DNA of 64,000 nucleotides from Squalus acanthias (Eukaryota): the NCBI GenBank assembly GCA_030390025.1, contig CM059427.1:188914001-188978000 (forward strand), in the 5' to 3' direction. A program made the position numbers and the translations under genes. Positions 9,827 to 57,192 of this stretch are shown here, piece by piece; position 1 is the stretch's first letter; each line of letters begins with the position of its first letter. Below the pieces are notes generated by a model. That model was not told the DNA's origin. It did not search any database and worked only from the letters and a program-made list of their open reading frames with translations.

Positions 9827-12800
9827 CATAGATACATAGAACAGTACAGCACAGTACAGGCCCTTCGGCCCTCGATGTTGTGCCGAGCATTGTCCGAGAC
9901 CAAGATCAAGCTATCACACTCCCTATCACTCTGGTGTGCTCCATGTGCTTATCCAATAATCGCTTGAAAGTTCCTAAAGTGTCCGACTCCACTATCACAG
10001 CAGGCAGTCCATTCCACACCCCAACCACTCTCTGAGTAAAGAAGCTACCTCGGACATCCCTTCTATATCTCCCCCCATGCACCTTATAGTTATGCCCCCT
10101 TGTAACAGCTGCCTCTACCCGAGGAAATAGTCTCTGAACATCCACTCTATCTATCCCCCTCATCATCTTATAAACCTCTATTAAGTCGCCTCTCATCCTC
10201 CTCCGCTCTAAAGAGAAAAGCCCCAACTCCCTCAATCTTTCCTCATAAGACCTCCCCCCCAAACCAGGCAGCATCCTGGTAAATCTCCTTTGCACTCTTT
10301 CCAATGCTTCCACGTCCTTCCTATAGTGAGGTGACCAGAACTGCACACAATATTCCAAATGTGGTCTCACCAAGGTCCTGTACAGTTGCAGCATAACCTC
10401 ACGGTTCTTAAACTCAAACCCTCTGTTAATAAACGCCAACACACCATAGGCCTTCTTTACTGCTCTATCCACTTGAGTGGCAACCTTCAGAGATCTGTGG
10501 ATATGAACCCCCAGATCCCTCTGCTCCTCCACGTTCCTCAGAACCCTGCCGTTGACCCTGTAATCCTTATTCAAATTTGCCCTACCAAAATGAATCACCT
10601 CGCACTTATCAGGGTTAAATTCCATCTGCCATTTTTCGGCCCAGCTCTGCATCCTATCAATGTCTCTTTGCAGCCTACAACTGCCCTCCACCTCATCCAC
10701 TACTCCACCAATCTTGGTGTCATCAGCAAATTTACTGATCCACCCTTCAGTCCCCTCCTCCAAGTCAGTGATAAAAATCACAAACAGCAGAGGACCCAGC
10801 ACCGACCCCTGTGGCACACCGCTGGTAACTGGTCTCCAGTCTGAAAATTTTCCATCCACCACCACCCTCTGCCTTCTATGAGATAGCCAGTTACTTATCC
10901 AATCGCCCAAATTTCCCTCTATCCCACAACTCCTTACTTTCTTCATGAGACGACCATGGGGAACCTTATCAAACGCCTTACTAAAATCCATGTATACGAC
11001 ATCAACTGCTCTACCTTCATCTACACACTTAGTTACCTCCTCAAAGAATTCAATCAAATTTGTTAGGCAAGACTTACCCTTCACGAATCCGTGTTGACTA
11101 TCCCTGATTAAGTTGCCCCTTTCCAAATGGTCATAAATCCTATCCCTCAGGACCTTTTCCATTATCTTACCAACCACCGAAGTAAGACTAACCGGCCTAT
11201 AATTACCAGGGTCATTCCTATTTCCTTTCTTGAAGAGAGGAACAACATTCGCCACTCTCCAGTCCTCTGACATCATCCCCGTGGACAGTGAGGACCCAAA
11301 GATCAAAGCCAGAGGCTCTGCAATCTCCTACCTTGCCTCCCAAAGAATCCTAGGATATATCCCATCTGGCCCAGGGGACTTATCGACCCTCAGGTTCTTC
11401 AAAATTACTAAAACATCTTCCCTCAGAACATCTACCACCTCCAGCCTATCCACCTTTATCACACTCTCATCCTCAAGAACATGGCCCCTCTCCTCGGTGA
11501 ACACTGACGAAAAGTATTCATTCATCACCTCTCCTATCTCTTCTGACTCCATGCACAAGTTCCCACTACTGTCCTTGACCGGCCCTACCCTCACCCTGGT
11601 CATTCTTTTATTTCTCACATAAGAGTAAAAAGCCTTGGGGTTTTTCTTGATCCGACCCACCAAGGACTTCTCATGCCCCCTCCTAGCTCTCCTAAGCTCT
11701 TTTTTTAGCTCATTCCTTGCTACCTTGTACCCCTCAATCGACCCAACTGAACCTTGTTTTCTCATCCTTACATACGCTTCCTTTTTCCTCTTGACTAGAC
11801 ATTCAACCTCTTTTGTGAACCATGGTTCTCTCACTCGGCCATTTCCTCCCTGCCTGACAGGGACATACCTATCAAGGACACGCAGTAATTGCTCCATGAA
11901 AAAGCTCCACTTTTCGTTTGTGCCTTTCCCTGATAGTTTCTGTTCCCATCTTATACTCCCTAATTCTTGCCTAATCGCATCATAATTACCCCTCCCCCAA
12001 TTATAAACCCTGCCCTGCCGTATGGCCCTATCCCTCTCCATTGCAATAGTGAAAGTTACCGAATTGTGGTCACTATCTCCAAAGTGCTCTCCCACATACA
12101 AATCAAACACTTGGCCCGGTTCATTACCCAGTACCAAATCCAACGTGGCCCCACCTCTTGTCGGCCTATCCACATATTGTGTCAGGAAACCCTCCTGCAC
12201 ACACTGTGCAAAAACTATCCCATCCGAACTGTTTGACCTATAAAGTTTCCAATCAATATTTGGAAAGTTGAAGTCACCCATGACAACTACTCTGTGACCT
12301 CCACACCTATTCATAATCTGCTTTGCAATTTCTTCCTCCACATCTTTATTACTATTTGGGGGCCTGTAGAAAACTCCTAACAACGTGACCGCTCCTTTCC
12401 TATTTCTAACTTCAGCCCATATTACCTCAGACGGCAGATCCCCCTCGAACTGCCTTTCTGCCGCTGTTAAACTATCCTTGATTAACAATGCTACTCCTCC
12501 ACCTTTCTTACCAACTTCCCTACTCTTACTGAAACATCTATACCCCGGAACTTCCAACAACCATTCCTGTCCCTGTTCTAACCATGTCTCCGTAATGGCC
12601 ACCACATCGTAGTCCCAAGTACCAATCCACGCTCCAAGTTCTCCTACCTTATTCCGGATGCTCCTTGCATTGAAGTAGACACACTTCAAGCCATCTTCCT
12701 GTCTGCCGGTACATTCCTGCGACCTTGATACCCTCCTCAGTACCTCCCTACACTCACCACTGGCTCGTGGACTACAGCCCTTTTTCCCATCCCCCTGACA

Positions 12801-12851
12801 AATTAGTTCCTGTCCCTGTGTTCCGATGTACCGCTCAGCCAAGGCTGTCAC
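9826..12851 (-). mobile_element. Young CR1 LINE; ORF2 (APE endonuclease + RT) with a single premature stop
   Basis: ORFs 11328-12851 (NARS, ITETW, YRPP, GDFN, SDH) and 9906-11306 (RT) are in the same frame, separated by TAG at 11328-11330. Confidence 0.95.
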
Positions 12852-13430: not shown

Positions 13431-13790
13431 ATCTGAGATGGTGATGGGCCGTCCCCCCTCCCAATGACCTCCCTCTCCCACACAGTTTGATATTTAGTCA
13501 CTCATCTCCCACAGATTCTCCTCAGTCTGGAACAGACAATGGATGAGAAGGGACTCTCCGAACTTGGATTAGGAGGTGACGACTCAGCAACCAGATCACA
13601 CCTCACTTCAGTTGAGGGAATCTCTCTTGACCTTATTTTCATTCACTGTAATACCTCTCTAAATTTTGATAAACTATTTGTGACCCAGACTCTGGGGAAG
13701 TGAGTCCAGGTTTATTATGAAAGCGAGGAGCAGATCAAAGGCCTGAAAGTTTCACACAGAACAATCTCAGGCTTTTGCTGAGCCGTCTTG

Positions 13791-14302
13791 TCATGTACTG
13801 AACTGGAGCTGTACTGGATTCGAAGGGGTTTATCATGTCCAGGACTGGAGCTGTGCTGGATTCGAAGGGGTTTATCATGTCCAGAACTGGAGCTGTGCTG
13901 GATTCGAAGGGGTTTATCATGTACAGAACTGGAGCTGTGCTGGATTCGAAGGGGTTTATCATGTACAGAACTGGAGCTGTGCTGGATTCGAAGGGGTTTA
14001 TCATGTCCAGAACTGGAGCTGTGCTGGATTCGAAGGGGTTTATCATGTACAGAACTGGAGCTGTGCTGGATTCGAAGGGGTTTATCATGACCAGAACTGG
14101 AGCTGTGCTGGATTCGAAGGGGTTTACCATGTAAAGGACTGGAGCTGTGCTGGATTCGAAGGGGTTTATCATGTGCAGAACTGGAACTGTGCTGGATTCG
14201 AAGGGGTTTATCATGTGCAGAACTGGAGCTGTGCTGGATTCAAAGGGGTTTATCATGTACAGAACTGGAGCTGTGCTGGATTCGAAGGGGTTTATCATGT
14301 AC
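13791..14302. repeat. 42-bp minisatellite, about 12 copies
   Basis: Unit tcatgtacagaactggagctgtgctggattcgaaggggttta, head-to-tail with no spacers. Confidence 0.97.
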
Positions 14303-14476
14303 ACAGATCCATTACCTTGGATGCATTCCCATAAATGGTTAAAAGAATGGAGTCAAAATGAAAGGAAATATACTCTCACTATTATTACAACATGGCTAAA
14401 GAGGATTAAAAACAGAAAATGGTGGAAAGCACTCAGCAGGACAGGCAGCATGTCTGGAGAGAGAAAGAGAGTTAAT

Positions 14477-16539: not shown

Positions 16540-19460
16540 CGTGCGAGTTTGGTGAGTAAGGAAGTTCGGTGAGGAGGGGACAGACCTGCTCCTTTCTTCT
16601 TTTTCTATCTTTGTCAGACTCCAGGAGAACAGGAGATAAAAATCTGCATGAGCGGGAACAGAGAAACAGCGGGAGTTCGGCTCTGTGAAACCCCCCAACC
16701 GCATTCAGAGAAAAATAAAAGGTGACATCACAGGGAAAAGGCAGAGGCAGCGGACCTGAGCGGGAGCGAGAGCGGAGGCAGAGCAAATAAACAGCGTGGC
16801 AGAGGAAGGCCCGAGAGCGGAGGCAGCGGACCTGACAACAAAAACAATGAATGACATCACAGGAAAGCAGGGAAGTGATTGGTTGGTCAGTATTTCTCTC
16901 TTTTCTTGTGCATTGGTTTAAATTAAGAGCTGGGATTAAAAACGAAATGTTCAAAACTTAAACACTTAATTAATTAAATCCATTAGAGATGGCAGGGCAG
17001 GATATGTGTTACTGCTGCAACATGTGGGAGCTGGGGGTCACCATTGAGGTCCACAGCGACCACATTTGCAGTAAGTGTTGGTTGCTCGAGGAACTTCGGC
17101 TCCATGTTGATGAGCTGGAGTCTGAGCTTCAAACACTGCGACACATCACGGAGGGGGAGAGTTACCTGGACGCTGTGTTCCAGGAGGTAGTCACACCCCT
17201 TAGATTAATTCATTGAAATTTGGTCCACGGTCAGGGACAGGTGGGTGTGACTACGAGCAAGGCAGGTATGGGGACCCAGGAGGTAGTAACATAGAAACAT
17301 AGAAACATAGAAGATAGGAGCAGGAGTAGGCCATTCAACCCCTCGAGCCTGCTCCGCCATTCCATGAGATCATGGCTGATCATCCAAACTCAGTACCCTG
17401 TAACTGCCTTCTCCCCATATCCCTTGATACCTTTAGCTTTAAGAAATATATCTAACTCATTCTTGAATATATTTAATGATTTGGCCTCAACTACCTTCTG
17501 TGGTAGAGAATTCCACAGGTTCACCACTCTCTGGGTGAAGAAATTCCTCCTCATTTCTGTCCTAAATGGCTTACACCTTATCACCTTATTCTTATGATGT
17601 GGAGATGCTTATTCTTAGATTATGACCTCTGGTTCTGGACTCTCCGACCATCGGGAACATTCTTCCTGCATCTAGTTTGTCCAGACCTGTCAGAATTTTA
17701 TATGTTTCAATGAGGTCCCCTCTCATTCTTCTATACTCCAGCGAGTATAAGCCCAATCGACCCAATCTCTCCTCATATGTCATTCCTGCCATCCCAGGTA
17801 TCAGCCTTGTGAATCTTCGCTGAACTCCTTCCATGGCAAGAACATCCTTCCTCAGATAAGGCGACCAAAACTGCACACAATACTCAAGGTGTGGTCTCAC
17901 CAAGGCCCTGTACAACTGCAGCAGGACATCCCTGTTCCTATACTCAAACCCTTTCGCTATGAAGGCCAACATACCATTTGCCTTCTTCACCGCCTGCTGC
18001 ACCTGCATGCTTACCGTCAGCGACCGGTGCACAAGGACACCCAGGTCTCGTTGCACTTCCCCTTCTCCCAATCTATTGCCATTAAGATAATAGTCTGCCT
18101 TTCTGTTTTTGTCACCAAAGTGGATAACCTCGCATTTATCCACATTATATTGCATCTGCCACGCTTCTGCCCACTCACCCAACCTGTCCAAATCATCCTG
18201 GAGTTTCTCGGTATCCTCCTCGCAGCACACACTCCCACCCAGCTTTGTGTCATCTGCAAACTTGGAGATATTACATTTAGTTCCCTTATCTAGATCATTA
18301 ATGTATATTGTGAATAGCTGGGGTCCAAGGACCAATCCCTGCGGTACCCCACTAGTCACTACTTGCCACTCGGAAAAAGACCCATTAATTCCTACTCTTT
18401 GCTTTCTGTCCACCAACCAGTTCTCTATCCAAGTCAATACCTTGCCCCCAATCCCATGTGCCTTTACTTTACACGCTAATCTCTTATGCGGGACCTTATC
18501 GAAAGCCTTTTGAAAGTCCAAATACACCACATCTACTGGTTCTCCCTTATCTACTTTCCCAGTTACATCCTCAAAAACTTCCAGTAGATTAGTCAAGCAC
18601 GATTTACCTTTTGTAAATCCATGTTGACTTTGTCCGATCCTGTCACTGTTTTTCAAGTGCTCAGCTATTACATCCTTTATAATGGACTCTAGCATTTTCC
18701 TCACAACCGATGTCAAGCTTACCGGTCTGTAATTCCCCACTTTCTCTCTACCACCCTTTTTGAATAGTGGGGTAACATTAGCTACCCTCCAGTCCATGGG
18801 TACAGTTCCAGATTCCATCGAATGTTGGAAGATGATCAGCAATGCATCTACTATTTCTAGGGCCACTTCCTTAAGTACCCTAGGATGTAGATTATCAGGC
18901 CCTGTGGATTTATCGGCTTTCAATCCCGTCAATTTCCCTAACACCATTTCCCTGCAAATACTGATTTCTTTCAGTTCCTCCCTTTCATCAGACCGTATGT
19001 TCTCCAACATCTCTGGGAGTTTATTTGTGGAGGAGCCTCAGCCCTTGCTCTTGTCCAACAGTTACGTGGTTCTTACTCTATGTGAGGGCGAGAGCAAGGA
19101 TTGCAGTGAGATTGAGCAAACTGACCACAGCACCGTGGTACTTGGAGTCATTCAAGTGGAGGGAGCAAAAAGAAACGTGGTAGTGGTAGCTGTAGGGGAC
19201 AGTATAGTTAGGGGGATAGATAATGTTCTCTGCATCCGAGAGCATGAGTCCCGAAGGCTGTGTTGCCTGCCAGGGTAAAGGACATCTTCTCTGGGCTGGA
19301 GAGGAACTTAGAGTGGGAGGAGAAAGATCCAGTTGTCGTGGTCCACGTAGGTACCAACAACATAGGTAGGACAAAGAAAGAGGTTCTGTTGAGAGAGTAT
19401 GAGCAGTTAGGGGCTAAATTAATAAGCAGAACCACAAAGGTAATAATCTCTGGACTACTA
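16540..19460 (+). mobile_element. CR1 5'UTR/ORF1 remnant, split by a younger CR1
   Basis: CYCCNMWE..HICSKC zinc-finger-like and GDSIVRG / VVVHVGTNN esterase-like ORF1 pieces lie on either side of 17289-19030. Confidence 0.85.
17289..19030 (-). mobile_element. CR1 LINE, 5'-truncated, with open RT (472 aa)
   Basis: ORF 17592-19010 and an (acatagaa)n tail. Confidence 0.95.
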
Positions 19461-20154
19461 CTTAGCATCATAATATATTATTTAACAATTTAACTTTCAC
19501 TCGCAGACTGTGGCTGTTTGTTATAAAACATAGTCTAAACTGCTTTTGACTGTCTTTGCAGCTGCATTTTGAACAAGTCTTAGCTTATTAGTTACCCAGG
19601 AGTAATAATAGGTAATATTATTTGGTAAATGACTACACTTGAATTTATACGTATATGATTCTCGTCTACTAAATATCTTTAAAATATCAGCCTTTCATAC
19701 AGAACTATTGAAATGTACACTTCGAAATATAAACTAATCCAGCTACATAAAAAATTACCACAAAATAAATCCAGAATAAAACCACAAATCTATTTCTAAA
19801 GTTTCCCCAAGTTGGATCGAACTAGTTTCCAGAGACAACAGTTCTCGATGGGCACAGACACGATGGGCTGAATGGCATCCTTCTGTGCTGTATCAGTCAT
19901 TCTATGATCTCAGATCAGTATCGGAGTTCAGGGTCTGTATTGCGATGGCTCCTTGTGAATCATCTGTTTCATTTCCTGTCGCATCGTGTGGATTCCCGCT
20001 GTTCGATATCTGATAAGGGGCATGAAATGTGCTTTAAAAAAAGAGCATATCCTTCAATAATAAACAACAACGACTACTTTTATTTATATAGAGTCTTTAA
20101 CATAATAAAACATCCCAAGGCGCTTCACAGGAGCGTTTTCAAAATAAATACAAT

Positions 20155-23867: not shown

Positions 23868-23983
23868 AACGGTTCAAAGATTGGTTTCTGGCAACTTTCA
23901 AGTTACTCATTTCCAAGAGGAATATTTGTGATAGTAAATTAAAATAATAAAACGATTGGGCTCCTAGTTTGAGCATTGTCCAT

Positions 23984-24037
23984 TCATTGATAATCAGGTA
24001 TGGCCCTCCGAGATCGCCCTGATTCCTTCCTCAGAGC
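23984..24037 (-). CDS. Receptor cytoplasmic/terminal exon (ALRKESGRSRRAIPDYQ*)
   Basis: Strong acceptor ttccctgctcccactttccatcag| after a 265-nt intron; phase 0; open for 17 codons then TGA. Confidence 0.6.
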   Translation of the reverse strand, partial: ALRKESGRSRRAIPDYQ

Positions 24038-24302
24038 CTGATGGAAAGTGGGAGCAGGGAAGTTATTGCAGTTTGAATCAGGAAAAATATTCAAAGCTAT
24101 CAGAATTCACCAAATTTGGAACAATTGCTTCCTTTAACTGATGATTCCTTTAAATTCAGTACAATGTACAATATTTAAATGAAATTTCAAAATATAGTTT
24201 GTGACCACATAATATCTGTTCAACGAACATCAGTTTTCTCAGTGTCAAGTGACAGCTCGGCACTAATTCCTGATTTACTGGAAAGCTTAAAGAAATTCTT
24301 AC

Positions 24303-24406
24303 TCTGGTCATCCTCTTCAAGCAGCAAATTAGTCCAACAGCAACGCCCAGTTTAACCAACAAGTAGCCCGAAACTGTGAAGATCCAAATCTCCGGAAGTG
24401 GTCTCA
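24303..24406 (-). CDS. Receptor transmembrane exon (VRPLPEIWIFTVSGYLLVKLGVAVGLICCLKRMTR)
   Basis: Acceptor ttgtccttcacag|, phase 1 in and phase 0 out (AGA|gtaaga). Hydrophobic span with a central K, then CC and a basic stop-transfer KR. Confidence 0.82.
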
Positions 24407-24976
24407 CTGTGAAGGACAAAGTTGAGATTTTAGTTTCACTCTCCATCTCGTTTAATATTTAAATACTCCTGCCAGTCAATCTATAAAATATGTGGAAAGT
24501 GAAAACATTCTGCTTTAAACACTGGGAGCCAGAGAACCAAATATTTGTGTCAAGACCGAGTCCACGTTGTGTTCTTTTTGTCACATTTTATGTGTCTGGA
24601 TTTGACTATTTTCATCAGATTCTTGTGGGTGCAATAGTTTTGAATTAAAGTGAGCAGCTCTGAGTGAATGAAAAGGGATTGAATAAACTCAAAATTGGGT
24701 CATTCATTGTCTAAACTGTCAAACTGGATGTGAAAGTGTTGTCCTGACCAGAGTGGCAGAATACAGATTCACACCTGAGATTCCCCAGGTGGCGAGTTCC
24801 CAATCTCGGCTGTGCTATCTGGGGAGACATTAACCATCAAGGTGTGAGACAGCCACAGATCTGTAACTGGTATGTAGTAAAAAAAAAACTATTTTGACAA
24901 GGTGCAATTTTGTTGAAACTATTAAAGTTTAACAGTGTTACCATGCATGTTTTTGAAAGTTTTGTGTGTTGTTGTA

Positions 24977-25731
24977 GGGCTGGATTTTCATAGGGCTTTG
25001 GAGGCGGGTTTGGAGGCATGTGGGGGGTTAAAATTGTGAAAAGTGGTGGGCGGACCTGATCCCGACTCCATTCCGCCTCCACGCAATTTTGATAAAATCG
25101 TGTGCGGTGTTCCCAACTCCGTCCCGCCTCCAAGAGGCGGGAGAGGCCATTAAAGCCCTCAACAATCCCTAAATTGGCTCTGTAATGCCATTTTGAAACG
25201 TTTTAGCTAGTTTAACCCTTTTCCAACGTGAAGCACGCCTGATGTGAAACACACCAGTGAAACCTGCCGGGAGCACAAGTGGATGGCTGACTATCAGCTG
25301 CAGGTCCACTATTACAACGGAGATGTGATGAAGGTAGTAGTAGTATTAGGTCTGAAAGTCACCTCTGATGCTGCTGCATTGAATGTCTTCAGAGACTGCC
25401 TGGCCTTTGCTGTGAGAGGACCTGGATGCAAAAAAATTCTCATTTTCTCTCTCTCTCTCTCTCTGAGCTGCTGCTCATTTTGCATCCAGGTCCACTCACA
25501 GCAAAGGCCACGCAGTCTCTGAAGACCTTCAATGCAGCTGCAATGATGACATCATCAGAGGCGACTTTCAGACTGAAACCACTAATTGGTTCATGGGTTC
25601 CCACATGCTGGAACTCAATTGACCAATTAATTAAAAATTGCATCAATCTCCCACATCCAATTGCAGTCGGGTGGATAACACAAAATGCGGTTGACACGAC
25701 CCCAACCCGCCCCAGTATCAAAATCCAGCCC
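24977..25731. mobile_element. TIR MITE (family B) with an internal palindrome
   Basis: TIR gggctggatttt / aaaatccagccc; TSD GTA/GTA. Confidence 0.85.
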
Positions 25732-27111
25732 GTAATGTTTATCTATGGTACATTTAATTTAATATTTTATTTCAAAATCTTAATTAATATAATATTGTAA
25801 CGCTTGATGAGGTGGACAATTTCATCAGTAGACAGACTCCTAGTATAATGATTCTCTACTGGGTCATCTCCTATGGCATTGATCATGGTCAAGGTTATCA
25901 AACCTAATTTTAAACTATTAAACAGAACATTGAATGTGATTTACCACGTTATCCCCTAATCATTTGTCTTTAGTTTACTCTCCATATCAATTGATTTCTG
26001 TCCAAGGCCTGCCGGCGTGATGCTAATGAGGCCCGTCCGTCAACATGGACCGGGCCTGCCGTCAGCACCATCGGGCGGCCGTCCATCGCCCTCCCGCTCC
26101 GCCGGTCAGACACCCGATAGTTCACATCGACCCCAAGTTCCTCTGGCGGGGTTTCTAGTGTGGGAGCGAACGCAGGATCCACGCACTGTGCTGCTCGGTG
26201 TGAAACCTTGCCTTGTAATATTGCTGAGCCTATTATTAACACTCAGTGCGTGGACAGGTGCTGTTGAGGTGGTGAATTGCTGTCTGGTGCCTATCACGGA
26301 TACTCTGTCGGAATTCCCACTGCTCAGTGAATCACAAGACCTTTGTGAGAATCCGGCATAAATAATTACACATAAATAAAGAAAAGGGATGAGGGAAGAT
26401 AGTCGATCCCTCCAGTTAATCCTTCAATGTAATCTTACAGTCTCATCTTCACAGCATCCAACTGCCTCTTATACGAGTCAAGAGATTTTGCTCCAGACCA
26501 ATATTTTCTGTTCCATACATTATCTTATAAAGCTCTTTCAGGTCCCCTTTCATTCCTCTGCTTTTAAATCTGCAGGTTCCAAGTCCGAGAAATTTAACCT
26601 TCACCCAAAATGGGTGGTAAAATGGCGAAGTAATTGCTTTGAGCGCCGGTCCCTGCCGGTCTGGGGCCCTTATTGTATTAAGCAGACGATCTGCAGATGG
26701 CAATCGGGCGCCCGATGCAGGTCACCAGTGGGGGTCTGATGAATACCGGCCAGCTTCAATGCTGAACCAGCCCACAGGTAGGTCCTTTGGGGAGCCAAAC
26801 CCGTGGGCTTGTGTGCGGGTTGAACCCAGGCCGCAGTATTATTGTGGAGCTTAGAGAAGCACTCCATCTCCCCCTGGCTCCACAGAAATGCAACTGTTAA
26901 AAGGTTTTCCGGCCATTTCTTGAGTGGCCTCCAACGGTCCTGTTAAACACCAGTGGTTCATCCACTCAAAACCTGGTACAGTGAGCTGGAGCTGGCCCGG
27001 CATAAGCTCCGCCCATCTGTACACCAATTTCAATCGGGGTACTCCAGTTGGCATTAGGACCCAGAATTGCATGTGCAAGACGCCTAAAGCCTGTTTCAGG
27101 AGGCCACCCAG

Positions 27112-27515
27112 AGCCTCGAGTTTCCTGCTCTTGTGCTCACAATGCACGAGCCCTCAGTTAGAATGAGAGTGATGAGGCTCCGATGTGTCCAGGATCAGCT
27201 GAGACAGGCAGAGAAGAAGAGTTTCTCTGAGCCTGAAGAGTGCAGACTTTCAATTGCAATTTTTGCAGCTGTGAATTGTGTTTTGCTGTGATTTCTTTTT
27301 AACAATCTGCCTAAGATTCGGATTGATTTGGGGTCTGAAATCCAATGGAAACAGCTTCTGAACCATTTTTGCTGTAAAAATAAATGCTTGCCTTGTCTCA
27401 ATGCGAATCTGAGACATCCAGACCGGGAAGGTTCCAAACTCGATCCCAGGCTGTGCTGTGTTATCTGAGGGGAGATTTTCTGAGGCTTTCCCCCGTGATC
27501 GAGCCTCACACACAG
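27112..27515. repeat. Local duplicate of 29313-29730
   Basis: Colinear similarity, highest over the acceptor/exon segment; includes a SINE-like piece. Confidence 0.9.
27158..27198 (-). CDS. Candidate alternative secretory/poison exon, copy 2 (ADPGHIGASSLSF*)
   Basis: Near-identical duplicate of 29359-29399 with the acceptor retained. Confidence 0.35.
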
Positions 27516-27654
27516 CCAGTGATCAGAAAATCATGGACGGCGAGACAGGAAACATACTCTTTCCTCTCCTTACTCTCTGACCAGGCCACATGCCTTCAGC
27601 CTCCATATCTCAAACTGCACACTCCTTCCAACCTTCCCATACAATTTTGACTTG

Positions 27655-28958
27655 AAATAGAAACATAGAAACATAGAAGATAGGAGCAGGAGTAGGGCAT
27701 GCGGCCCCTCGAGCCCGTTCCGCCATTTAATGAGATCATGGCTGATCATCCAAATTCAGTACCCTGTCCCTGCATTCTCCCCATATCCCTTGATCCTTTT
27801 TAGCCTTAAGAAATATATCTAACTCCTTCTTGAATATATTTAATGAATTGGCCTCAACTGCCTTGTGTTGTGGAGAATTCCACAGGTTCACCACTCTCTG
27901 GGAGAAGAAATTCCTCCTCATCTCAGTCCTAAATGGCTTACCCCTTATCCTTAGACTGTGACCCCTGGTTCTGGACTCCCCCACCATCGGGAACATCCTT
28001 CCTGCATCTAGTCTGTCTAGTCCTGTTAGAATTTTATAAGTTTCAATGAGATCCCCTCTCATTCTTCTAAACTCTAGCGAATATAAGCCTAATCGACCCA
28101 ATCTCTCCTCATACATCATTCCTGCCATCCCAGGTATCGTCTGGTGAATCTTCGCTGCACTCCCTCCATGGCAAGAACATCCTTCCTCAGATAAGGTGAC
28201 CAAAACTGCACACAATACTCAAGGTGTGGTCTCACCAAGGCCCTGTACAACTGCAGCAAGACATCCTTGCTCCTGTACTCGAATCCTCTCGCTATGAAGG
28301 CCAACATACCATTTGCCTTCTTAACCGCCTGCTGCACTTGCATGCTTACCTTCAGCGACTGGTGCACAAGGACATCCAGGTCTCGTTGCACTTCCCCTTT
28401 TCCCAATCTATTGCCGTTCAGATAATAATCTGTCTTCCTGTTTTTGACAGCAAAGTTGATAACCTCGCATTTATGCACATTATACTGCATCTGCCATGCA
28501 GCTGCCCAATCACCCAACCTGTCCAAATCATATTGGAGTTTCTCTGCATCCTCCTCACAGCACACACACCCACCAAGCTTTGTGTCGTCTGCAAACTTGG
28601 AGATATTACATCTAGTTCCCTCATCTAGTTCCCTCATCTAGATCATTTATATATATTGTGAATAACTGGGGTCCTAGCACCGATCCCTGTGGTACCCCAC
28701 TAGTCACAGCCTGCCACTCAGAAAAAGACCCGTTTATTCCAGCTCTTTGCTTCCTGTCTGCCAACCAGTTCTCTATCCAAGACAGTACCTTACCCCCAAT
28801 CCCGTGTGCGTTAACTTTGCACGCTAATCTCTTATGCGGGACCTTATCGAAAGCCTTCTGAAAGTCCGAATACACCACATCCACTGGTTCTCCCTTATCT
28901 ATTCTACCAGTTACATCCTCAAAAAATGCCAGTAGATTAGTCCAGCATGATTTACCTG
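27655..28958 (-). mobile_element. CR1 LINE 3' part
   Basis: RT ORFs, frameshifted by a 13-bp tandem duplication (catctagttccct) at about 28610-28640. Confidence 0.93.
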
Positions 28959-29358
28959 CATACGGCGTGTTCACAGACTCAAATAACGTGGATGGTAGAC
29001 TTGGCTCTAGGGTGGCATTGTCTCTGCTTTTCACAATTCCAGGATATGTCTCTTCTATATCAGCTTACAGAAGGCTGCACATTAGCAGATTTGTACCTGA
29101 GGGGCCCTCCCAACCAGTGCTCACTGACTCTGAGAGCAAATTCAGCAATTCCACTCTCCCAGTGTAATTTGCTTTGACAGCAAAATGAAAAAGCTGTTTC
29201 CCTTGGTTTCCACCACAAAATCAATCAGTCCGAATCCCCGTGAACATTTTCCCCCTTCCCATGATCTGCCTGTGGGGTTCCAAAATGAGCTAATGAGGGC
29301 TAGTGAATCTGCAGCCTCGAGTTTCCTGATCTTGCGCTCACAATGCACGAGCCCTCAG

Positions 29359-29399
29359 TTAGAATGAGAGTGATGAGGCTCCGATGTTTCCAGGATCAG
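29359..29399 (-). CDS. Candidate alternative secretory/poison exon, copy 1 (ADPGNIGASSLSF*)
   Basis: Strong acceptor ctcttcttctcttcctgtctcag| about 430 nt after the D4 donor; phase-1 reading ends in TAA. Confidence 0.4.
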
Positions 29400-29827
29400 C
29401 TGAGACAGGAAGAGAAGAAGAGTTTCTCTGAGCCTGAATAGTGGAGACTTTCAACTGCAATTTTTGCAGCTGGGCATTACTTTTTGCTGAGATTTATTTG
29501 GGCATTCTGCAGCCGCATTCTGATTGATACTGGGTCAGAAAACCAATGGAAACTGCTTGTGTACCATTTTACTATCAAATATAAATGCTTGCCGTGTCTC
29601 AGTGAGTTTACCAAGAGCATAGTTGAGACATACAGAGCAGGAAAGTTCCAAGCTCGATCCCAGGCTGTGCTGAGTTATCTCAGGGTAGATTTTCTGAGGC
29701 TCTGCCCCACTGTAGAGCCTCACACACAGGATATAAAGGAGGGGCTACTTCTGGCAACAAGAACAATAAGTGACCAGAATTTTCTATCCAGATTATAAAT
29801 ATAAAGAGCAAACCCTGAGTCACTTAC

Positions 29828-30097
29828 CACTGGGCTCCAGATAGTACGGGACTAAAACCCGGGGCCTGTTTTGATAAAACAAAGCACATATCCAGTTCCC
29901 TCTGCCTCTGTCAGCTTTCTGAATAATCAGTCTCAATGATTTCTCTTCCCCATTCTGTCCATTCCATGTGTTTTCTTCAACAGTTTTGCCATCACTATTG
30001 ATCCAAACAAGTCTCATTGATTCAGTGACATCAGAGACAGAGCAGGTCAGGGTAACGGTGTCTCCCTCAGTCACTGCATCAGATGGTTCAGCTGTGA
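29828..30097 (-). CDS. Receptor D4 exon: C2-type Ig domain with WxC
   Basis: 78-nt intron from D3; acceptor cttgtttacacag|, donor AGTG|gtaagtg, 270 nt. Sequence EGDTVTLTC..LVW..GNWIC. Confidence 0.9.
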
Positions 30098-30175
30098 CTG
30101 TGTAAACAAGAAAATCATTTAGATTTCAAACAATAACTTGATCATCGGAAAGAATGACAACATTCTGTCTCCTAC

Positions 30176-30529
30176 CTTTAACTGTGATTAGTTTAATGGT
30201 CACCATGTTATATGATCCCAGAGAACATGTGTAATCTCCGGCATCTTCAAACAGTACAGGGACAATCCTCACACTGAAGTTCTTGCCATTAAACTTTGTC
30301 TCTGTGGGCACCAGTCGACTCCCAAAGTAGGTCCTGTTTACATTGATGAGCTGAGATATCGAAGCAGATGCTATTGATTTCTCCTGATTTTGAAGATGAT
30401 GTGACCTCCAGGTCCATGCAGTAGTGTTGTAAGAGTGAACATAATTCTTATAATAACCATAGCAAATCAGGTCGAGTTCACTGTGATCTGTGCCTGATCG
30501 ATAAAGTGTGTAACTCTTCCCATATAAAT
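30176..30529 (-). CDS. Receptor D3 exon: V-type Ig domain
   Basis: Acceptor tctctctattacag|, donor AAAG|gtagg, 354 nt, phase 1-1. Sequence LDLIC..AWTW..FGSRL..FSVRIVPVLFEDAGDYTC; the 5' part was translated by hand beyond the ORF track. Confidence 0.9.
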
Positions 30530-34107: not shown

Positions 34108-37100
34108 ACATAAGAACCTAAGAACATAAGAAATAGGAGCAGGAATAGGACATTTGGCCCTTCGAGCCTGCTCCACCATTCAATGAGATCTTCTACCTCA
34201 CCTCCACTTTCCTGAACTATCACATATCCCTTGATTACCTTAATAGCCAAAAATCTATCGATCTCTGTTTTGAATATACTCAACAACTGAGCCTCCACAG
34301 CCCTCTGGGGTAGAGAATTCCAAAGATTCACCACCCTCTGAGTGAAGAAATTTCTCCTCATCTCAGTCCTAAATGGCCGACCCCTTATTCTGAGACTGTG
34401 ACTCGTGGTTCTAGACTCCCCAGCCAGGGAAACAACCTCCCTGCATCTACCCTGTCAAGCCCTATAAGAATTTTGTATGTTTCATTGAGATCACCTCTCA
34501 TTCTTCGAAACTCTAGAGAATATAGGCCCAGTCTACTCAATCTGTCCTCATTAGGACAATCCCCCCCATCCCAGGAATCAGTCTGGTGAACCTTTGTTGC
34601 ACTCCCTCTATGGCAAGTATATCCTTCCTTAGGTAAGGAGACCAAAACTGTACACAATACTCCAAGTGTGGTCTCACCAGGGCCCTATATAATTGCAGTA
34701 AGACGTCATTACTCATATACTCATATCCTCTTGTAATAAAGGCCAACATACCATTTGATTTCCTCATTGCTTGCTGTACCTGCATGTTAAATTTCAGTGA
34801 TTCGTGTACAAGGTCCCTCTGAACACCAACATTTCCCAATCTCTCACCATTTAAAAAATACCCTGCTTTTCTATTTTTCCTACCAAAATGGATAACTTCA
34901 TTCCTCCATATTATATTCCATTTGAATGTTCTTGCCCACACAATTAGTCTGCCTATATCCCCTTGAAGCCTCTTTGCATCCTCCTCACAACTTACAGTCC
35001 CACCCAGCTTTGTATCATCAGCAAACTTGGATGTAATACATTTGGTCCCCTCATCCAAATCATTAATGTAGATTGTGAATAGCTGAGGCCGAAGCACTGA
35101 TCGTTGCGGTACTCCACTAGTTACAGCCTGCCAACCCAAAAATAACCCGTTTATTCCTACTCTCTGTTTTCTGTCCGTTAACCAATTCTCAATCCATGCT
35201 AGTATATTACCTTCAATTCCATGAGCCCTAATTTTGTTTAAGAACCTCTTGTGTGGCATCTTATCAAATGCCTTCTGAAAATCCAAATACACCGCATCCA
35301 CTGGTTCCCCATTATATATTCTGCTCGTTACCTCAACAAACTTTAACAGATTTGTCAAACAGGATTTCCCTTTCATAAATCCGCGTTGACTCTGCCCAAT
35401 CTTATTTGTATTTTCTAAGTGCCCTGTTACCACGTCCTTAATAATAGATTCTTGCAATTTCCCTGCTACTGATGTCAGGCTAACTGATCTGCAGTTTCCT
35501 GTTTTCTCTCTCCTTCTTTCTTAAATAGTGGGGTTACATTTGCTACCTTGCAATCCACGAGAACCATTCTAGAATCTATGGAATTAGGGAAAATGACAAC
35601 CAATGCATCCACTATCTCTACAGTCAACTCTTTCAAAACCCTAGTATGTAGGCCATCAGGTCCAGGGGATTTATTGGCTTTCAGTCCCATTAATTCCTCC
35701 AGTACTACTTTTTACTAATACTAATATCTTTCAGTTCCTCATTCTCGCCAGACCCTTGGTTGTCCACTATTTCCAGGTAGTTTTTTGCGTCTTCTTCTGT
35801 GAAGACAGACACGTATTTATATAATTTCCCTGCCATTTCCTTATTCCCCATTATAATTTCTCCTGTCTCAGCCTGTAAGGGACCCACATTTACTTTCGCT
35901 AATCTTTTCCTTTTTACATACAAATAGAAGCTTTTACAGTCTGTTTTTATGTCTCTTGCTAGTTTACTCATATTCTATTCTCCCTTTCATTAGCAATTTC
36001 TTGGTCCTCCTTTGCTGAATTCTAAACTCCTCCCAATCCTCAGGCTTACTATTCTTTTTGGCAGCGTTATAAACCTCTTCCTTTGATCTATCTTTAACTT
36101 CTCTTGTTATCCACGGATTGGACCACTTTTCCTGTGGGTTTTTTGTTCCTTAAACAAATGTATATTTGTTGTAAATTATGTATTAATTCTTTAAATGCTA
36201 GCCATTGCTCATCCACTGTCATACCTTTTAATGTAGTTTCCCAATCTACCTTAACCAAATCGCCCCTCATACCATCGTAATTTGCTTTGTTTAGATTTAA
36301 GACCCTAGTTTCAGATTTAACTAATTCACTTTCAAACTGAATATAAAATTCTATCATATTATGGTCACTCTTCCCTAAAGGCCCCTTTACTAGAAGGTTA
36401 TTAATTAACCCTTTCTCGTTGCACAATACTAGATCTAAAATAGCCTGTTCCCTTGTTGTTCTTCAACATACTGATCTAGAAAACTATCTTTCATACATTC
36501 CATTAATTCGTCCTCCACACTATTACTGTAAATATGGTTTGCTCAGTCTATATGTAGATTAAAGTCCCCCTTGATCTTGATTACTGTATACCCTTGTTCC
36601 TGTGAAGGAATAGCCAGGATTCAGAAAAATACACGATACTACGAACAGATTTCTGAAATTATTAATAAAAAGCATACTGGGTTTAAAAGACACAAGCCTT
36701 AGCAGACACAGGCTGTAAACAGAATACAGGCTTATGAGATAAGATGGTTTGTTAACACAAAGCTGTGAACACAAGCTTTGGGGAATGAGTTAAAAATGCG
36801 AAATCAAGCCCTATTGATAAAGCAAAGGTTTGCTTCCAGAGCGTCTGAACATTGGAATCAAAACAATGGAATGACCCAAGTAAAGTGTTATAATCTAACA
36901 CGTCGAACAGGTGCACAGAACATTAAAAAAAACAAGTGACTTTGAAAGAATGACATCAAGTAAGAAAACCCTGTCGTAAAATAGTTTTATGTTAAACTTA
37001 GAAGACAGGAAACACAATTAAATATGCAACCAATTGAGATAGCTAGAAAACAAGTAAACTTGAGAGAAGTGTTTTCAATTTACATATTGTAAATATAATA

Positions 37101-45461: not shown

Positions 45462-45731
45462 ATTGGTCCACAGAAAAATCTGCTTTTCCTGTGAGAATAA
45501 TGGATCCAGCTTCCTGCACTTCACACGCGTACAACTCCTTATCCTCTACTGCAGCATGTTTGACTATCAGATAGACTGTGTTATTTAGTCGGATCTGATC
45601 AGTGTTGCTCCTGTTCTGCTGAGATGAGTCTCTCTGTTTCCATTGAAGACTGACTGTATCTGAGAGTTTGGAGATGGTACAGCTGAGTGTAACGTCACTG
45701 CCCACCACAGCACTCTGTGGACTTGACTCAA
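45462..45731 (-). CDS. Receptor D2 exon: C2-type Ig domain
   Basis: Acceptor tgtttttcacag|, donor CAAT|gtaagt, 270 nt, phase 1-1. Sequence GSDVTLSC..LQW..EDKELYAC. Confidence 0.9.
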
Positions 45732-54100: not shown

Positions 54101-54222
54101 TTGTGTTTCTTGCCTTTGTTTACTCGGCCTTCCCCTATTGTTTCTCACCCTTCCAACATTTGTTTCTGAATGCATATTACTTCCCCCTGTTTTGCTACAT
54201 AGGTTCCCCTTCCCCTGCCATA
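51143..54222 (-). mobile_element. Young CR1 with near-intact ORF2
   Basis: (acatagaa)n tail; flanking duplication tagata. Confidence 0.95.
51371..54175 (-). CDS. CR1 ORF2, APE endonuclease + reverse transcriptase (934 aa)
   Basis: Uninterrupted ORF with [26 protein letters not shown] and FADD; frameshift only at the extreme C-terminus (FFTQRW*). Confidence 0.93.
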   Translation of the reverse strand: MHSETNVGRVRNNRGRPSKQRQETQRAILNHKSKRTKDVNKISLKALCLNARSIRNKVDELTVQIDVNRYDVIGITETWLQNNQGWELNIQGYSTFRKDRIKGKGGGVALLVKEEINAIARKDISLEDVESIWVELQNTKGQKMLVGVVYRPPNSSSEVGEGMKQEIRGACKKGTAVIMGDFNMHKDWATQTGSNTVEEDFLECLRDGFLNQYVEEPTRGEAILDWVLCNEEGLISNLVVRDPLGKSDHSMVEFYIRMEKETVKSETMVQNLNKGNFEGMRRELARLNWQAIFKGLSVEGQWQTFRDRMDELQQLYFPVWRKNKKGKVAQPWLTREIRDSIKTKEVAYKLARSSSKPGDWENFKTQQRRTKGLIRAGKIKYERKLADNIKMDCKSFYKYVKRKRLVKTNVGPRQSETGEVVMGNKEMAFQLNKYFGSVFTVEDTHNLPEIKGVRGSGKREELREILISREKVLGKLMGLKAEKSPGPDGLHPRVLKEVALEIVDALTIIFQHSLDSGSVPMGWRVANVTPLFKKGGREKAGNYRPVSLTSVVGKMIEAIIKDVITDHLESGDMIGPSQHGFVKGKSCLTNLLEFFEDVSNRVDRGEPVDVVYLDFQKAFNKVPHKRLVSKVKAHGIGGNVLMWIENWLAHRKQRVGVNGYFSEWQAVTSGVPQGSVLGPQLFTLYINDLDEGIKCNISKFADDTKFGGSVNNEENARRLQSDLDRLGEWANVWQMKYNVDKCEVIHFGGKNREVDYYLNGGRLGKGEVQRDLGVMVHQSLKVGRQVQQAVKKANGMMAFIVRGFEYRSREVMLQLYRALVRPHLEYCAQFWSPNLRKDILAIEGVQRRFTRLIPGMAGLTYQERLGQLNLYPLEFRRMRGDLIETFKILTGLDKLDVGRMFPMLGKTRTRGHSLRIKGKPFKTELRRNFFTQRW

Positions 54223-54754
54223 TTAGATAAGGTGGTTAAGAAGGCATACGGGTTACTTTACTTTATTAGCCAAGGCATAGAATATAAGAGCAGGGAGGTT
54301 ATGCTAGAACTGTATAAAACACTCGTTAGACCACAGCTAGAATACTGCATACATTTCTAGTCACCACTTTACAGGAAAGATGTGATTGCACTACAGAGGG
54401 TACAGAGGTGATTTATGAGGATGTTGCCAGAACTGGAGAATTTTAGCTATGAGGAAAGATTGGATAGGCTGGGGTTATTTTCTTTGGAACAGAGAAGGCT
54501 GAGGGGAGATTTTATTAATGTGTATCAAATTATGAGCAACTTAGATAGAATGGATAGGAAGGACCTATTTCCCTTAGAAGAAAGGTCAATAACCAGGGGA
54601 CAAAGATTTAAAGTAATTGGTAGAAGGATTAGAGGGGAGTTGAGGAGAACTCTTTTCACCCAGAGGGTGGTGGGGGTCTGGAACTCACTGCCTGAAAGTA
54701 TGGTAGATGCAGAAACCCTCATCGCATTAAAAAATACTTGGATATGCACTTTAA

Positions 54755-57104: not shown

Positions 57105-57192
57105 TTTGTGTGAAAACAGACGGAAGTAGAAACACAAAGAAACTGATCATCAAACCAGCTGGCATTTTGCTGCAGAAAAATCGTAGCTTCAT
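57105..57192 (-). CDS. Receptor leader exon (MKLRFFCSKMPAGLMISFFVFLLPSVFTQ)
   Basis: Hydrophobic signal-like peptide; phase-1 donor CAAA|gtaagtg at 57104. An upstream acceptor (tttcttacag|, exon starts 57214) implies a non-coding first exon. A second in-frame ATG lies at 57165. Confidence 0.75.

What the first reader, a model, noticed from the sequence alone, without database searches (positions are those of the whole stretch)
24303..24406. Transmembrane lysine, di-cysteine and a short motif-less tail
Seen: TM IWIFTVSGYLLVKLGVAVGLICCL has a central K; the predicted tail KRMTRALRKESGRSRRAIPDYQ has no ITAM, ITIM or CxC. Established: a central TM Lys is how KIR2DS, TREM and NKp44-type receptors pair with the acidic TM residues of DAP12. 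Inference: signalling through a DAP12/DAP10/FcR-gamma-type adaptor, with CC possibly palmitoylated. Inhibitory paralogs may exist in neighbouring units, forming a paired-receptor system.
Basis: partly seen in the sequence, partly recalled or inferred. Interest (0 to 1): 0.85.

Follow-up and report, generated by a model that had tools for sequence, protein, structure and literature searches.

The report
Shark activating receptor with membrane lysine
This exon encodes the membrane anchor of a shark immune-type receptor whose buried lysine marks it as the "activating" partner in a large, so far unnamed shark-and-ray family of paired activating and inhibitory receptors shaped like CD4 and LAG-3.

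Summary
The transmembrane (TM) exon is real. It lies on the minus strand at 24406-24303, has AG/GT borders, and encodes RPLPEIWIFTVSGYLLVKLGVAVGLICCLKRMTR. Contigs of two runs join it directly to the D4 exon.

The lysine is invariant. All 24 distinct homologous TM segments from sharks and rays carry it, scored with that column left out. The di-cysteine is not conserved (CC in 6 of 23).

Homology puts the cytoplasmic exon at 20009-19905 (ISNSGNPHDATGNETDDSQGAIAIQTLNSDTDLRS*), up to 85% identical to orthologue tails. That tail also lacks ITAM, ITIM and CxC, but it carries a conserved QTLNSDxDL motif.

The gene has seven intact exons: leader, V-C2-V-C2, TM and tail. It belongs to a cartilaginous-fish family annotated "uncharacterized". 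The family has Lys-TM members and uncharged-TM members with two ITIMs, and their ectodomains can be 95-97% identical.

The closest solved structures are LAG-3 and CD4. The closest bony-fish relatives look G6F-like.

Coupling to a DAP12-type adaptor is the best reading but was not tested here.

The parts
57105..57192 (-). Leader exon (coding part): MKLRFFCSKMPAGLMISFFVFLLPSVFTQ, phase-1 donor A|gtaagt
   Evidence: tblastn to N-termini of P0005/P0004
48677..49018 (-). D1 exon: V-like domain without any cysteine
   Evidence: 71% identical to D1 of P0005. Pfam finds nothing for it alone. In the AF2 model of orthologue P0062 the domain is a beta sandwich
45462..45731 (-). D2 exon: C2-like Ig domain (C...YAC)
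   Evidence: (Ig_2/Ig_3/I-set E 6e-8)
30176..30529 (-). D3 exon: V-set domain with the canonical cysteines
   Evidence: 61 homologues found with this exon
29828..30097 (-). D4 exon: C2-like domain with the W-x-C motif (NWICALF). Reading through its donor gives ...EPSGK*
   Evidence: donor used in the joint 29828->24406
24303..24406 (-). Stalk and transmembrane exon with central Lys, CC, and the basic stop-transfer KRMTR (the finding)
19902..20009 (-). Cytoplasmic exon: ISNSGNPHDATGNETDDSQGAIAIQTLNSDTDLRS plus the TAG stop; acceptor ttatcag|ATA, phase 0
   Evidence: tblastn to tails of P0079 (85%, E 1.2e-15), P0081, P0062, P0084 and P0134; sequence. Assigned by homology only; the splice itself lies outside the stretch laid
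23984..24037 (-).
   Evidence: No joint in 4 runs, only low-depth unbroken contigs across it; no match to any family tail

Best explanation
The exon is the stalk and transmembrane segment of an intact seven-exon gene: leader, four Ig domains V-C2-V-C2, TM, and one tail exon. It encodes a type I surface receptor.

The gene is the activating-type member of a multigene family of sharks and rays. The family also holds inhibitory members with near-identical ectodomains, an uncharged TM and two ITIMs, and apparently secreted forms.

The invariant mid-membrane Lys sits in a conserved G-Y-L-x-x-K-L...G-L helix face. It most likely docks the acidic TM residue of a small dimeric signalling adaptor of the DAP12, DAP10, FcR-gamma or CD3-zeta class. 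Ligand binding by the ectodomain would then be turned into ITAM or YxxM signalling, while the ITIM paralogues oppose it.

Shown here: the exon, its splice to D4, conservation of the Lys, a short tail free of tyrosine motifs, and the existence of ITIM counterparts.

Inferred: adaptor pairing, which adaptor, the cell type and the ligand.
For: - Splice D4->TM in contigs of 2 runs.
- Lys in 24 of 24 distinct homologous TM segments, with the K column excluded from the score. These score 68 or more; the next best scores 37 and is the inhibitory TM type, which has Leu there.
- Neighbouring TM positions vary, but G13, Y14, L15, L19 and G24 are also fixed in the Lys-type segments.
- Tails of 23 distinct Lys-type forms are 9-45 aa. 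None of the 23 has an ITIM, ITAM or Cx[CH]; 3 of 23 contain any Tyr.
- 33 of 39 uncharged-TM members carry ITIM-like motifs, typically IHYGSI plus VIYAQI.
- P0062 and P0005 (Lys-TM) against P0073 (ITIM) are 95% and 97% identical over 435 aa, then unrelated from the D4 end onwards.
- All exons are open, with consistent phases: 1533 coding nt.
- From recalled knowledge, not tested here: a single central TM Lys with a short tail is the signature of DAP12-coupled receptors such as KIR2DS, TREM and NKp44.
Against: - No adaptor was identified or tested. I could not search for chondrichthyan DAP12, DAP10 or FcR-gamma without typing sequence from memory. My paper searches found nothing on them in sharks.
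- The tail has a motif conserved between sharks and skates (QTLNSDxDL). It could signal or sort on its own.
- The TM->tail splice rests on homology only.
- The runs laid are labelled 'RNA?' (a guess). They are contigs that differ from the window by a few percent, so they come from another individual, species or paralogue.
- Some RefSeq models (Pristis P0064/P0006) read through the TM-exon donor instead of splicing.
Confidence: 0.65

Rival explanations
1. Adaptor-independent receptor. The Lys serves another purpose, such as ER retention or quality control, pairing with another membrane partner, or association with its inhibitory sibling. Signalling or trafficking would then run through the conserved cytoplasmic TGNETDD...QTLNSDxDL stretch.
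For: The tail motif is conserved from sharks to skates: 8 of 23 distinct tails match my pattern, and the two Scyliorhinus tails carry the variant LKTLNSD. This is unusual for DAP12-type receptors, whose tails are usually unconstrained (recalled). The TM shows more fixed positions than the Lys alone.
Against: Myliobatiform rays keep the Lys-TM but have a completely different tail (NRQITPQG..RRGRARG..). Several models have tails of only 9-12 aa. The Lys, not the tail, is therefore the constant feature. The pairing with ITIM forms fits the classic activating/inhibitory logic.
Confidence: 0.2
2. The TM exon is spliced to 24037, giving the 22-residue tail KRMTRALRKESGRSRRAIPDYQ, at least as an alternative isoform.
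For: There is an in-frame AG acceptor with a pyrimidine tract (TCCCTGCTCCCACTTTCCATCAG|GCT) 266 nt downstream of a phase-0 donor.
Against: No joint 24303->24037 in 4 runs. Unbroken low-depth contigs cross both sites, and depth over 23960-24159 equals that of those contigs only. The peptide matches no tail among 159 related proteins. 5 of 6 orthologue C-termini match the exon at 20009 instead.
Confidence: 0.05
3. The gene is a bona fide CD4 or LAG-3 orthologue: an MHC class II co-receptor rather than a member of a separate paired-receptor family.
For: LAG-3 is the top PDB hit of the family profile (E 2e-11) with W-x-C aligned. LAG-3 and CD4 take Foldseek ranks 1, 2, 4, 5, 10 and 15. CD4 ranks 1-4 by VIA-align, Z 15.4-17.4. 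The tail is a single exon, as in LAG-3 (PMC10768021, passage seen).
Against: [quoted passage not shown] The paper's sections that I read describe one intact CD4 and one LAG-3 in catshark, against many tandem copies here. D2 has YxC, not WxC. D1 has no cysteines. None of the 86 relatives is named CD4 or LAG-3 by its source.
Confidence: 0.05

Closest known systems
DAP12-coupled activating Ig receptors and their ITIM partners (KIR2DS/KIR2DL, TREM, NKp44, SIRP-beta/alpha, PILR; in fish NITR, DICP, LITR)
   Same: Type I Ig receptor with a single Lys in the middle of the TM and a short tail without tyrosine motifs. Sibling genes have near-identical ectodomains, an uncharged TM and ITIMs. Secreted forms also occur. 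The teleost NITR/DICP description of inhibitory, activating and secreted forms was seen in 10.1101/2021.06.11.448072 (passages).
   Different: No sequence relationship to those families was found. The ectodomain is a four-domain V-C2-V-C2 rod. The TM has a fixed GYLxxKL...GL pattern, and the tail has a conserved motif. Adaptor binding is untested.
CD4 / LAG-3 family
   Same: V-C2-V-C2 architecture. W-x-C in D4, aligned to the LAG-3 D2 W-x-C. Predicted continuous strands bridge V and C2 (model residues 132-147 and 336-350), the feature that PMC10768021 section 3.6 describes as rare. These are the best PDB matches by profile and by structure. No intron within D1, as in shark CD4 and LAG-3 (PMC10768021 section 3.2).
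   Different: No Cx(C/H) or FxxL(D/E) tail motif. Lys-TM and classical ITIM tails instead. D2 has YxC. D1 lacks both cysteines. Large tandem multigene family. Pfam CD4-specific models do not hit.
G6F (human MHC-encoded) and fish G6F-like, an ITAM-bearing collagen receptor of thrombocytes
   Same: Four Ig-like domains plus a TM. The family profile aligns over 438 columns with sturgeon P0032 (hhalign probability 100, E 1.5e-50). The tails of P0032 and bichir P0050 carry NIYEN, the YxN site that PMC3528668 describes for G6fL (passages). The nearest named ESM-Atlas clusters of P0062 and P0032 are 'g6f-like' at 0.97.
   Different: That P0032 is G6F-like is my inference; its sources call it uncharacterized. 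This gene has no YxN and no ITAM of its own. The family is expanded and paired, unlike the single G6fL gene described.
CEACAM family
   Same: N-terminal V-like domain without a disulfide. ITIM pair in the inhibitory members. Activating/inhibitory pairing. One distant Heptranchias relative is auto-named CEACAM5-like. CEA scores E 2.3e-11 against the family profile.
   Different: The CEA score is a sum of six weak pieces, the best with i-Evalue 0.036. D3 here is a V-set domain with cysteines, not a C2 A/B domain. Structure searches rank CD4 and LAG-3 first; the CEA model 1e07 is rank 32.

Membership tests
Adaptor-coupled (DAP12-type) activating immunoreceptors | Type I membrane protein with an Ig ectodomain | tested here: met
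   Leader plus four Ig exons plus TM; model of orthologue P0062
Adaptor-coupled (DAP12-type) activating immunoreceptors | One basic residue (Lys) in the centre of the TM helix, conserved | tested here: met
   K is residue 13 of 24; K in 24 of 24 distinct homologous segments
Adaptor-coupled (DAP12-type) activating immunoreceptors | Short cytoplasmic tail without ITAM or ITIM | tested here: met
   40 aa (KRMTR plus 35) with no Tyr and no Cys; 0 of 23 family tails carry ITIM, ITAM or Cx[CH]
Adaptor-coupled (DAP12-type) activating immunoreceptors | Physical and functional association with an acidic-TM adaptor | not testable with these tools
   No adaptor sequence could be queried; paper searches found nothing for sharks
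Adaptor-coupled (DAP12-type) activating immunoreceptors | Inhibitory counterpart with a closely similar ectodomain | tested here: met
   P0073 against P0062/P0005, 95-97% over 435 aa. Met in the family, not in this window
CD4/LAG-3 | Four Ig-like domains V-C2-V-C2 with rod-like V-C2 units | tested here: met
   bridging strands; CD4 Z 17.4 over 317 residues; LAG-3 D3-D4 Z 13.4, rmsd 3.3 over 160
CD4/LAG-3 | W-x-C motif in both D2 and D4 | tested here: inconclusive
   D4 has WIC, aligned to the LAG-3 W-x-C. D2 has YAC (family consensus LYxCEV)
CD4/LAG-3 | Tail motif Cx(C/H) (CD4) or (F/Y)xxL(D/E) (LAG-3) | tested here: not met
   Absent from the window tail and from 23 of 23 Lys-type tails for Cx[CH]. 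Inhibitory forms carry classical ITIMs instead
CD4/LAG-3 | Location in the conserved CD4/LAG-3 genomic region | not tested
   The window holds only this gene and retroelements; no flanking marker genes were seen
G6F / G6F-like | Homology to G6F-like ectodomains | tested here: inconclusive
   Strong homology to sturgeon P0032. The G6F-like identity of P0032 rests on its NIYEN tail and on Atlas cluster names, not on a named sequence
G6F / G6F-like | Cytoplasmic YxN (Grb2 site), plus an ITAM in fish G6fL | tested here: not met
   No Tyr in the window tail
CEACAM | N-terminal V-like domain followed only by C2-set A/B domains | tested here: not met
   D3 is V-set with cysteines. CEA matches only by summed weak pieces

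The most novel reading that the evidence does not exclude
This family would be a surviving sister, or an ancestral type, of CD4 and LAG-3, and homologous to G6F-like. It is an ancient V-C2-V-C2 rod receptor in which activation or inhibition is set by swapping the TM and tail module: Lys-TM plus adaptor, or ITIM tail. On this reading the CD4 (activating) versus LAG-3 (ITIM-like) split is the remnant of a paired-receptor system older than the split of sharks and rays, perhaps recognising MHC class II-like ligands.
Probability: 0.15. Interest if true: 0.85.

Novelty: new variant of a known kind. Interest (0 to 1): 0.6.

Why it matters
Paired activating and inhibitory receptors that signal through charged-TM adaptors are central to NK and myeloid cell control in mammals. 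My searches found no description of them in cartilaginous fish, the oldest living lineage with human-type adaptive immunity.

An invariant Lys-TM module shared by sharks and rays places adaptor-type signalling, if confirmed, before the two lineages split. It also gives a concrete receptor for experiments.

The CD4/LAG-3-like ectodomain links the family to the origin of two clinically important co-receptors. The proteins are in RefSeq only as 'uncharacterized'. My searches found no paper describing them.

Tried and rejected
- Single-exon PDB sequence searches were not decisive. D1 hit nothing. D4 hit CD276 and, weakly, LAG-3.
- Pfam gave only generic Ig families, both for the exons and for full-length relatives. 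The local copy did not return CD4-specific models or Ig_LY6G6F.
- I considered SLAM/CD2 (V domain without a disulfide plus C2). No search supported it beyond one NTB-A row for D1 (Z 13.2) and a weak Receptor_2B4 hit (E 0.063).
- I considered CEACAM and rejected membership (see the membership test).
- The search for homologous proteins with sturgeon P0032 found only 9 unnamed relatives, so it did not settle the G6F-like name.
Recounting showed it changes the first exon base, not the AG (note 4). That argument is withdrawn.
- I also read the end of an X1 contig exactly 30 nt into the TM exon as a sign that the donor at 24303 is used. An X2 contig crosses the same site unbroken, so I give this no weight.
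- The TM->20009 junction could not be checked with reads.
- Searches of the scan's own notes for adaptor or ITIM notes gave only unrelated leads.
Supplementary Files 3-8 of PMC10768021 (BLAST top matches and tail alignments of shark CD4 and LAG-3) might show whether those authors met this family.
- Ohashi et al. 2010 (G6F-like) was not read. It is known here only through citations and passages in PMC3528668.

Full report
**1. What is at the coordinates**

The finding lies on the minus strand. Reading 24480->24150 shows ...tccttcacag|TGAGACCA...ATGACCAGA|gtaagaat. Translated in the one open frame (checked), the exon 24406-24303 gives (V)RPLPEIWIFTVSGYLLVKLGVAVGLICCLKRMTR.

The hydrophobic span IWIFTVSGYLLVKLGVAVGLICCL has 24 residues. 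Lys is the 13th. Glu precedes the span and KRMTR follows it, as expected for a type I membrane protein.

**2. The gene around it**

Stop-to-stop ORFs, sequence reads and tblastn with relatives define seven exons, all on the minus strand:

| Exon | Coordinates |
|---|---|
| Leader | 57192-57105 |
| D1 | 49018-48677 |
| D2 | 45731-45462 |
| D3 | 30529-30176 |
| D4 | 30097-29828 |
| TM | 24406-24303 |
| Tail | 20009-19902 (with stop) |

- All introns are phase 1, except the phase-0 intron after the TM exon.
- The coding length is 1533 nt and every exon is open.
- Introns are filled with LINE-type reverse-transcriptase ORFs.
- Pfam sees generic Ig domains in D2 and D4, a weak V-set in D3 and nothing in D1.
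Each was searched by itself, and whole-protein work used database relatives.

**3. Is the exon used?**

One reads search with the D3-D4 stretch found 24 runs, all labelled 'RNA?' or '?' and with coded names. Contigs of X1, X2, X5 and X9 were laid on 23960-29955 at 90% likeness.

- A joint 24406<->29828 skips 5421 nt. Its ends are CT..AC, which is GT..AG on the gene's strand.
- It stands in one contig each of X1 (depth 240, 30 letters on the shorter side) and X2 (depth 35, 36 letters).
- It was not listed in X5 or X9.

Caveats: these are contigs, the RNA label is a guess, and intronic contigs differ from the window by 3-7%. They come from another individual, species or paralogue.

**4. The tail**

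That join is in frame behind an AG.

Against it:
- No joint 24303->24037 is listed in any of the 4 runs.
- Low-depth contigs cross both sites unbroken: X1 record 1 on 23960-24332, X2 record 8 on 24054-24400, X5 record 16 on 23960-24241.
- Depth over 23960-24159 equals the depth of those contigs alone.
- The peptide matches no tail among 159 fetched proteins; the best E is 0.25, at an unrelated place.

For the alternative:
- The C-termini of Lys-type relatives match a different exon, 20009-19905.
- The matches are P0079 85% (E 1.2e-15), P0081 79%, P0062 64%, P0084 53% and the skate P0134 62%.
- That is 5 of 6 queries. The sixth, a stingray form with another tail type, matches only the TM exon (first seen).

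With the acceptor ttatcag|ATA and phase 0, the tail reads KRMTR + ISNSGNPHDATGNETDDSQGAIAIQTLNSDTDLRS*. It has no Tyr and no Cys, so no ITAM, ITIM, ITSM or CxC.

This splice is inferred from homology. The exon lay outside the stretch I had laid, and the reads tool has one call.

**5. The family**

The D3 exon, searched with HMMER against 1.84 billion representatives, gave 61 hits (31 at E<=1e-10).

A word-indexed search with the Pristiophorus protein P0062 (509 aa) gave 86 hits among 6254 candidates.
- All 86 are from sharks, rays or, in one case, Callorhinchus.
- 82 are called uncharacterized, hypothetical or Ig-like domain-containing.
- 2 are called 'CD276 antigen homolog' and 2 'VCAM1-like' (names also).

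I classified 95 family proteins crudely:
- 24 have the TM pattern [GA]Y[LF]xxK[LI].
- 39 have an uncharged TM, and 33 of these carry ITIM-like motifs, typically IHYGSI and VIYAQI.
- 32 have no TM by my rule. These are partial models and apparently secreted forms, plus three that one search showed to be Lys-type.

**6. Conservation of the Lys, tested without circularity**

I slid the window's 34-residue exon peptide, ungapped, along all 140 proteins then held. Scoring used BLOSUM62 with the Lys column left out.

- 26 proteins (24 distinct segments) score 68-144.
- The next best score is 37, and it belongs to the inhibitory TM type.
- All 24 distinct segments have K at the omitted column. The five inhibitory-type rows have L.
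- The species include Pristiophorus, Heptranchias, Heterodontus, Scyliorhinus, Chiloscyllium, Hemiscyllium, Pristis, Leucoraja, Amblyraja, Rhinoraja, Mobula, Hypanus and Hemitrygon (names).
- In the Lys-type rows G13, Y14, L15, L19 and G24 are also fixed, while positions 16, 17 and 20-23 vary.

The di-cysteine is not conserved. Of 23 distinct 24-residue spans, 6 have CC, 6 have one Cys and 11 have none.

The tails of these 23 are 9-45 aa. None has an ITIM, ITAM or Cx[CH], and 3 contain a Tyr.

A stretch TGNETDD...(E)A(V/I)A(L)QTLNSDxDL recurs in sharks and skates. 8 of 23 match my pattern, and the two Scyliorhinus tails carry LKTLNSD. Myliobatiform rays have a different, Arg-rich tail.

**7. 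Paired receptors**

In Pristiophorus japonicus, the Lys-TM proteins P0062 and P0005 are 414/435 (95%) and 422/435 (97%) identical to P0073. The identity runs up to ...YYLEPS, the end of D4, and the sequences are unrelated afterwards. P0073 has an uncharged TM and the motifs IHYGSI and VIYAQI.

Between species, Lys-type proteins are only 53-75% identical to P0062. The ectodomains therefore look homogenised within a species, while the TM and tail modules are old.

Consecutive gene numbers on one contig mix the types. In Chiloscyllium punctatum, 0019109 has no TM, 0019110 is an ITIM form and 0019111 is a Lys-TM form. Hypanus LOC132405176-81 and Mobula LOC134348858-60 are similar.

No inhibitory TM or tail exon lies in this window. 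0 of 7 inhibitory C-termini hit it beyond the D4 end; the best other hit has E 0.037.

**8. What the ectodomain resembles**

*Sequence profile.* A profile of 45 family members (A1) searched against PDB sequences puts LAG-3 first.
- 7tzg_C scores E 2e-11, and three further LAG-3 sequences score E 5e-11 to 1e-9.
- One stretch covers the end of a V domain and a whole C2 domain.
- It aligns the family's RGkWtC..vpYnLeV to LAG-3's W-x-C region.
- A second stretch aligns ITVkVTaePS...CSVSdVtes.rLVW to LAG-3 D3/D4.
- CEA has the same total E, but from six weak pieces.
- CD4 appears at E 1e-5.

*Structure model.* An AlphaFold2 model of P0062 built from A1 has pLDDT 82.4 and pTM 0.74.
- It shows four beta domains.
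- Long strands at 132-147 and 336-350 bridge D1-D2 and D3-D4.
- A TM helix runs from 441 to 476.

*Structure searches.*
- Foldseek ranks LAG-3 first and second (E 3.6e-18 and 5.4e-18). CD4 takes ranks 4, 5, 10 and 15, among generic multi-Ig entries.
- VIA-align on those candidates ranks four CD4 ectodomain entries first, with Z 17.4, 17.2, 16.3 and 15.4 over 317-332 aligned residues.
- The next row is nectin-1 at Z 13.8.
- LAG-3 D3-D4 aligns to model D3-D4 with Z 13.4, rmsd 3.3 over 160 residues and 23% identity.

*What the literature says.* PMC10768021 (sections 3.1, 3.2 and 3.6 read) names W-x-C in D2 and D4 and the domain-bridging strand as CD4/LAG-3 hallmarks. It names Cx(C/H) or (F/Y)xxL(D/E) tails as the defining motifs.

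Here D4 has WIC but D2 has YAC, and neither tail motif is present. I therefore say 'CD4/LAG-3-like', not 'member'.

**9. Bony-fish relatives**

The D3 search also reached unnamed proteins of sturgeon (P0032), bichir (P0050), coelacanth (P0034) and eels (P0026, P0037).

- hhalign of A1 against P0032 gives probability 100, E 1.5e-50, 438 columns and 27% identity, from the leader to the TM.
- The tails of P0032 and P0050 carry NIYEN.
- PMC3528668 (passages) describes zebrafish G6f-like as having four Ig-like domains, a Grb2-binding YxN and an ITAM. Its Y499F primers encode ...ENI(Y/F)EN...
- ESM-Atlas features put 'g6f-like' clusters nearest to both P0062 and P0032 (0.97), then CD4 and LAG-3 (0.96). 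These scores are leads, not tests.

The shark family is thus probably homologous to G6F-like. The name of P0032 is my inference, because one search found only unnamed relatives.

**10. Mechanism**

The best reading (0.65) is an activating receptor whose Lys docks an acidic-TM adaptor, opposed by ITIM paralogues.

The link from a central Lys to DAP12 comes from recalled mammalian and teleost work. The teleost statement was seen in 10.1101/2021.06.11.448072.

Which adaptor it would be cannot be told from sequence. I found no paper on DAP12 or DAP10 in sharks.

The main rival (0.2) is adaptor-independent function through the conserved tail motif.

**11. Novelty and score**

The kind of system is well known: Lys-TM activating and ITIM inhibitory Ig receptors.

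New are its carrier, a CD4/LAG-3-like and G6F-like four-domain family across sharks and rays, its fixed TM pattern and its tail motif.

I found no description in print. The library lacks most subscription journals, and supplements were closed.

Interest 0.6.

Noticed in passing
window 29820-29830 (minus), D4 donor: Reading through the D4 donor gives ...YYLEPSGK*. RefSeq models from other species end the same way: Chiloscyllium plagiosum P0065/P0067/P0068 ...EVSGK, P0125 ...EPSGK, P0129 ...EPCGK, P0093 ...EFRGK. This looks like a conserved intron-retention route to a secreted four-domain form.
   Followed up: partly
window 30098-30176 (minus), D3-D4 intron: Reading through the D3 donor gives ...ITVKGRRQNVVILSDDQVIV*. 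Similar endings close database proteins of Cetorhinus (P0091, P0109: ...VKGRRQNV.AVFNDQV.V) and Rhinoraja (P0018). The 78-nt intron seems to encode a conserved alternative C-terminus for a three-domain soluble form.
   Followed up: no
window 26372-29855: Between D4 and the TM exon, only low-depth contigs (depth 3-10) and a LINE reverse-transcriptase copy (27739-29064, very deep repeat signal) were laid. The high-depth joint skips the whole interval. No joint links D4 to the 'duplicated stop-containing exon' noted by another finding.
   Followed up: partly
proteins P0026 (Anguilla) and P0037 (Synaphobranchus): Eel relatives of the family also come in two forms. One has a Lys in the TM and an 18-residue tail. 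The other has an uncharged TM and three ITIM-like motifs (VIYLNV, VLYSTI, VVYSSV).
   Followed up: no
window 24159-24302 (minus): Reading through the TM-exon donor gives VRISLSFPVNQE... This aligns with the annotated tails of Pristis P0064/P0006 (GRIFMKCQVNQK...) and Leucoraja P0137 (..NRVRIS). Some RefSeq models therefore use the unspliced form, either as a minor isoform or as an annotation artefact.
   Followed up: partly
window 13718-14352: A minisatellite is open in several frames on both strands. The repeated peptide units are ...HDKPLRIQHSSSS... and ...MINPFESSTAPVLY....
   Followed up: no
window 51374-54235, 9909-12851, 17595-19037, 34540-35520: Long LINE-type ORFs (endonuclease plus reverse transcriptase, up to 954 aa) fill the introns and flanks of the gene.
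   Followed up: no
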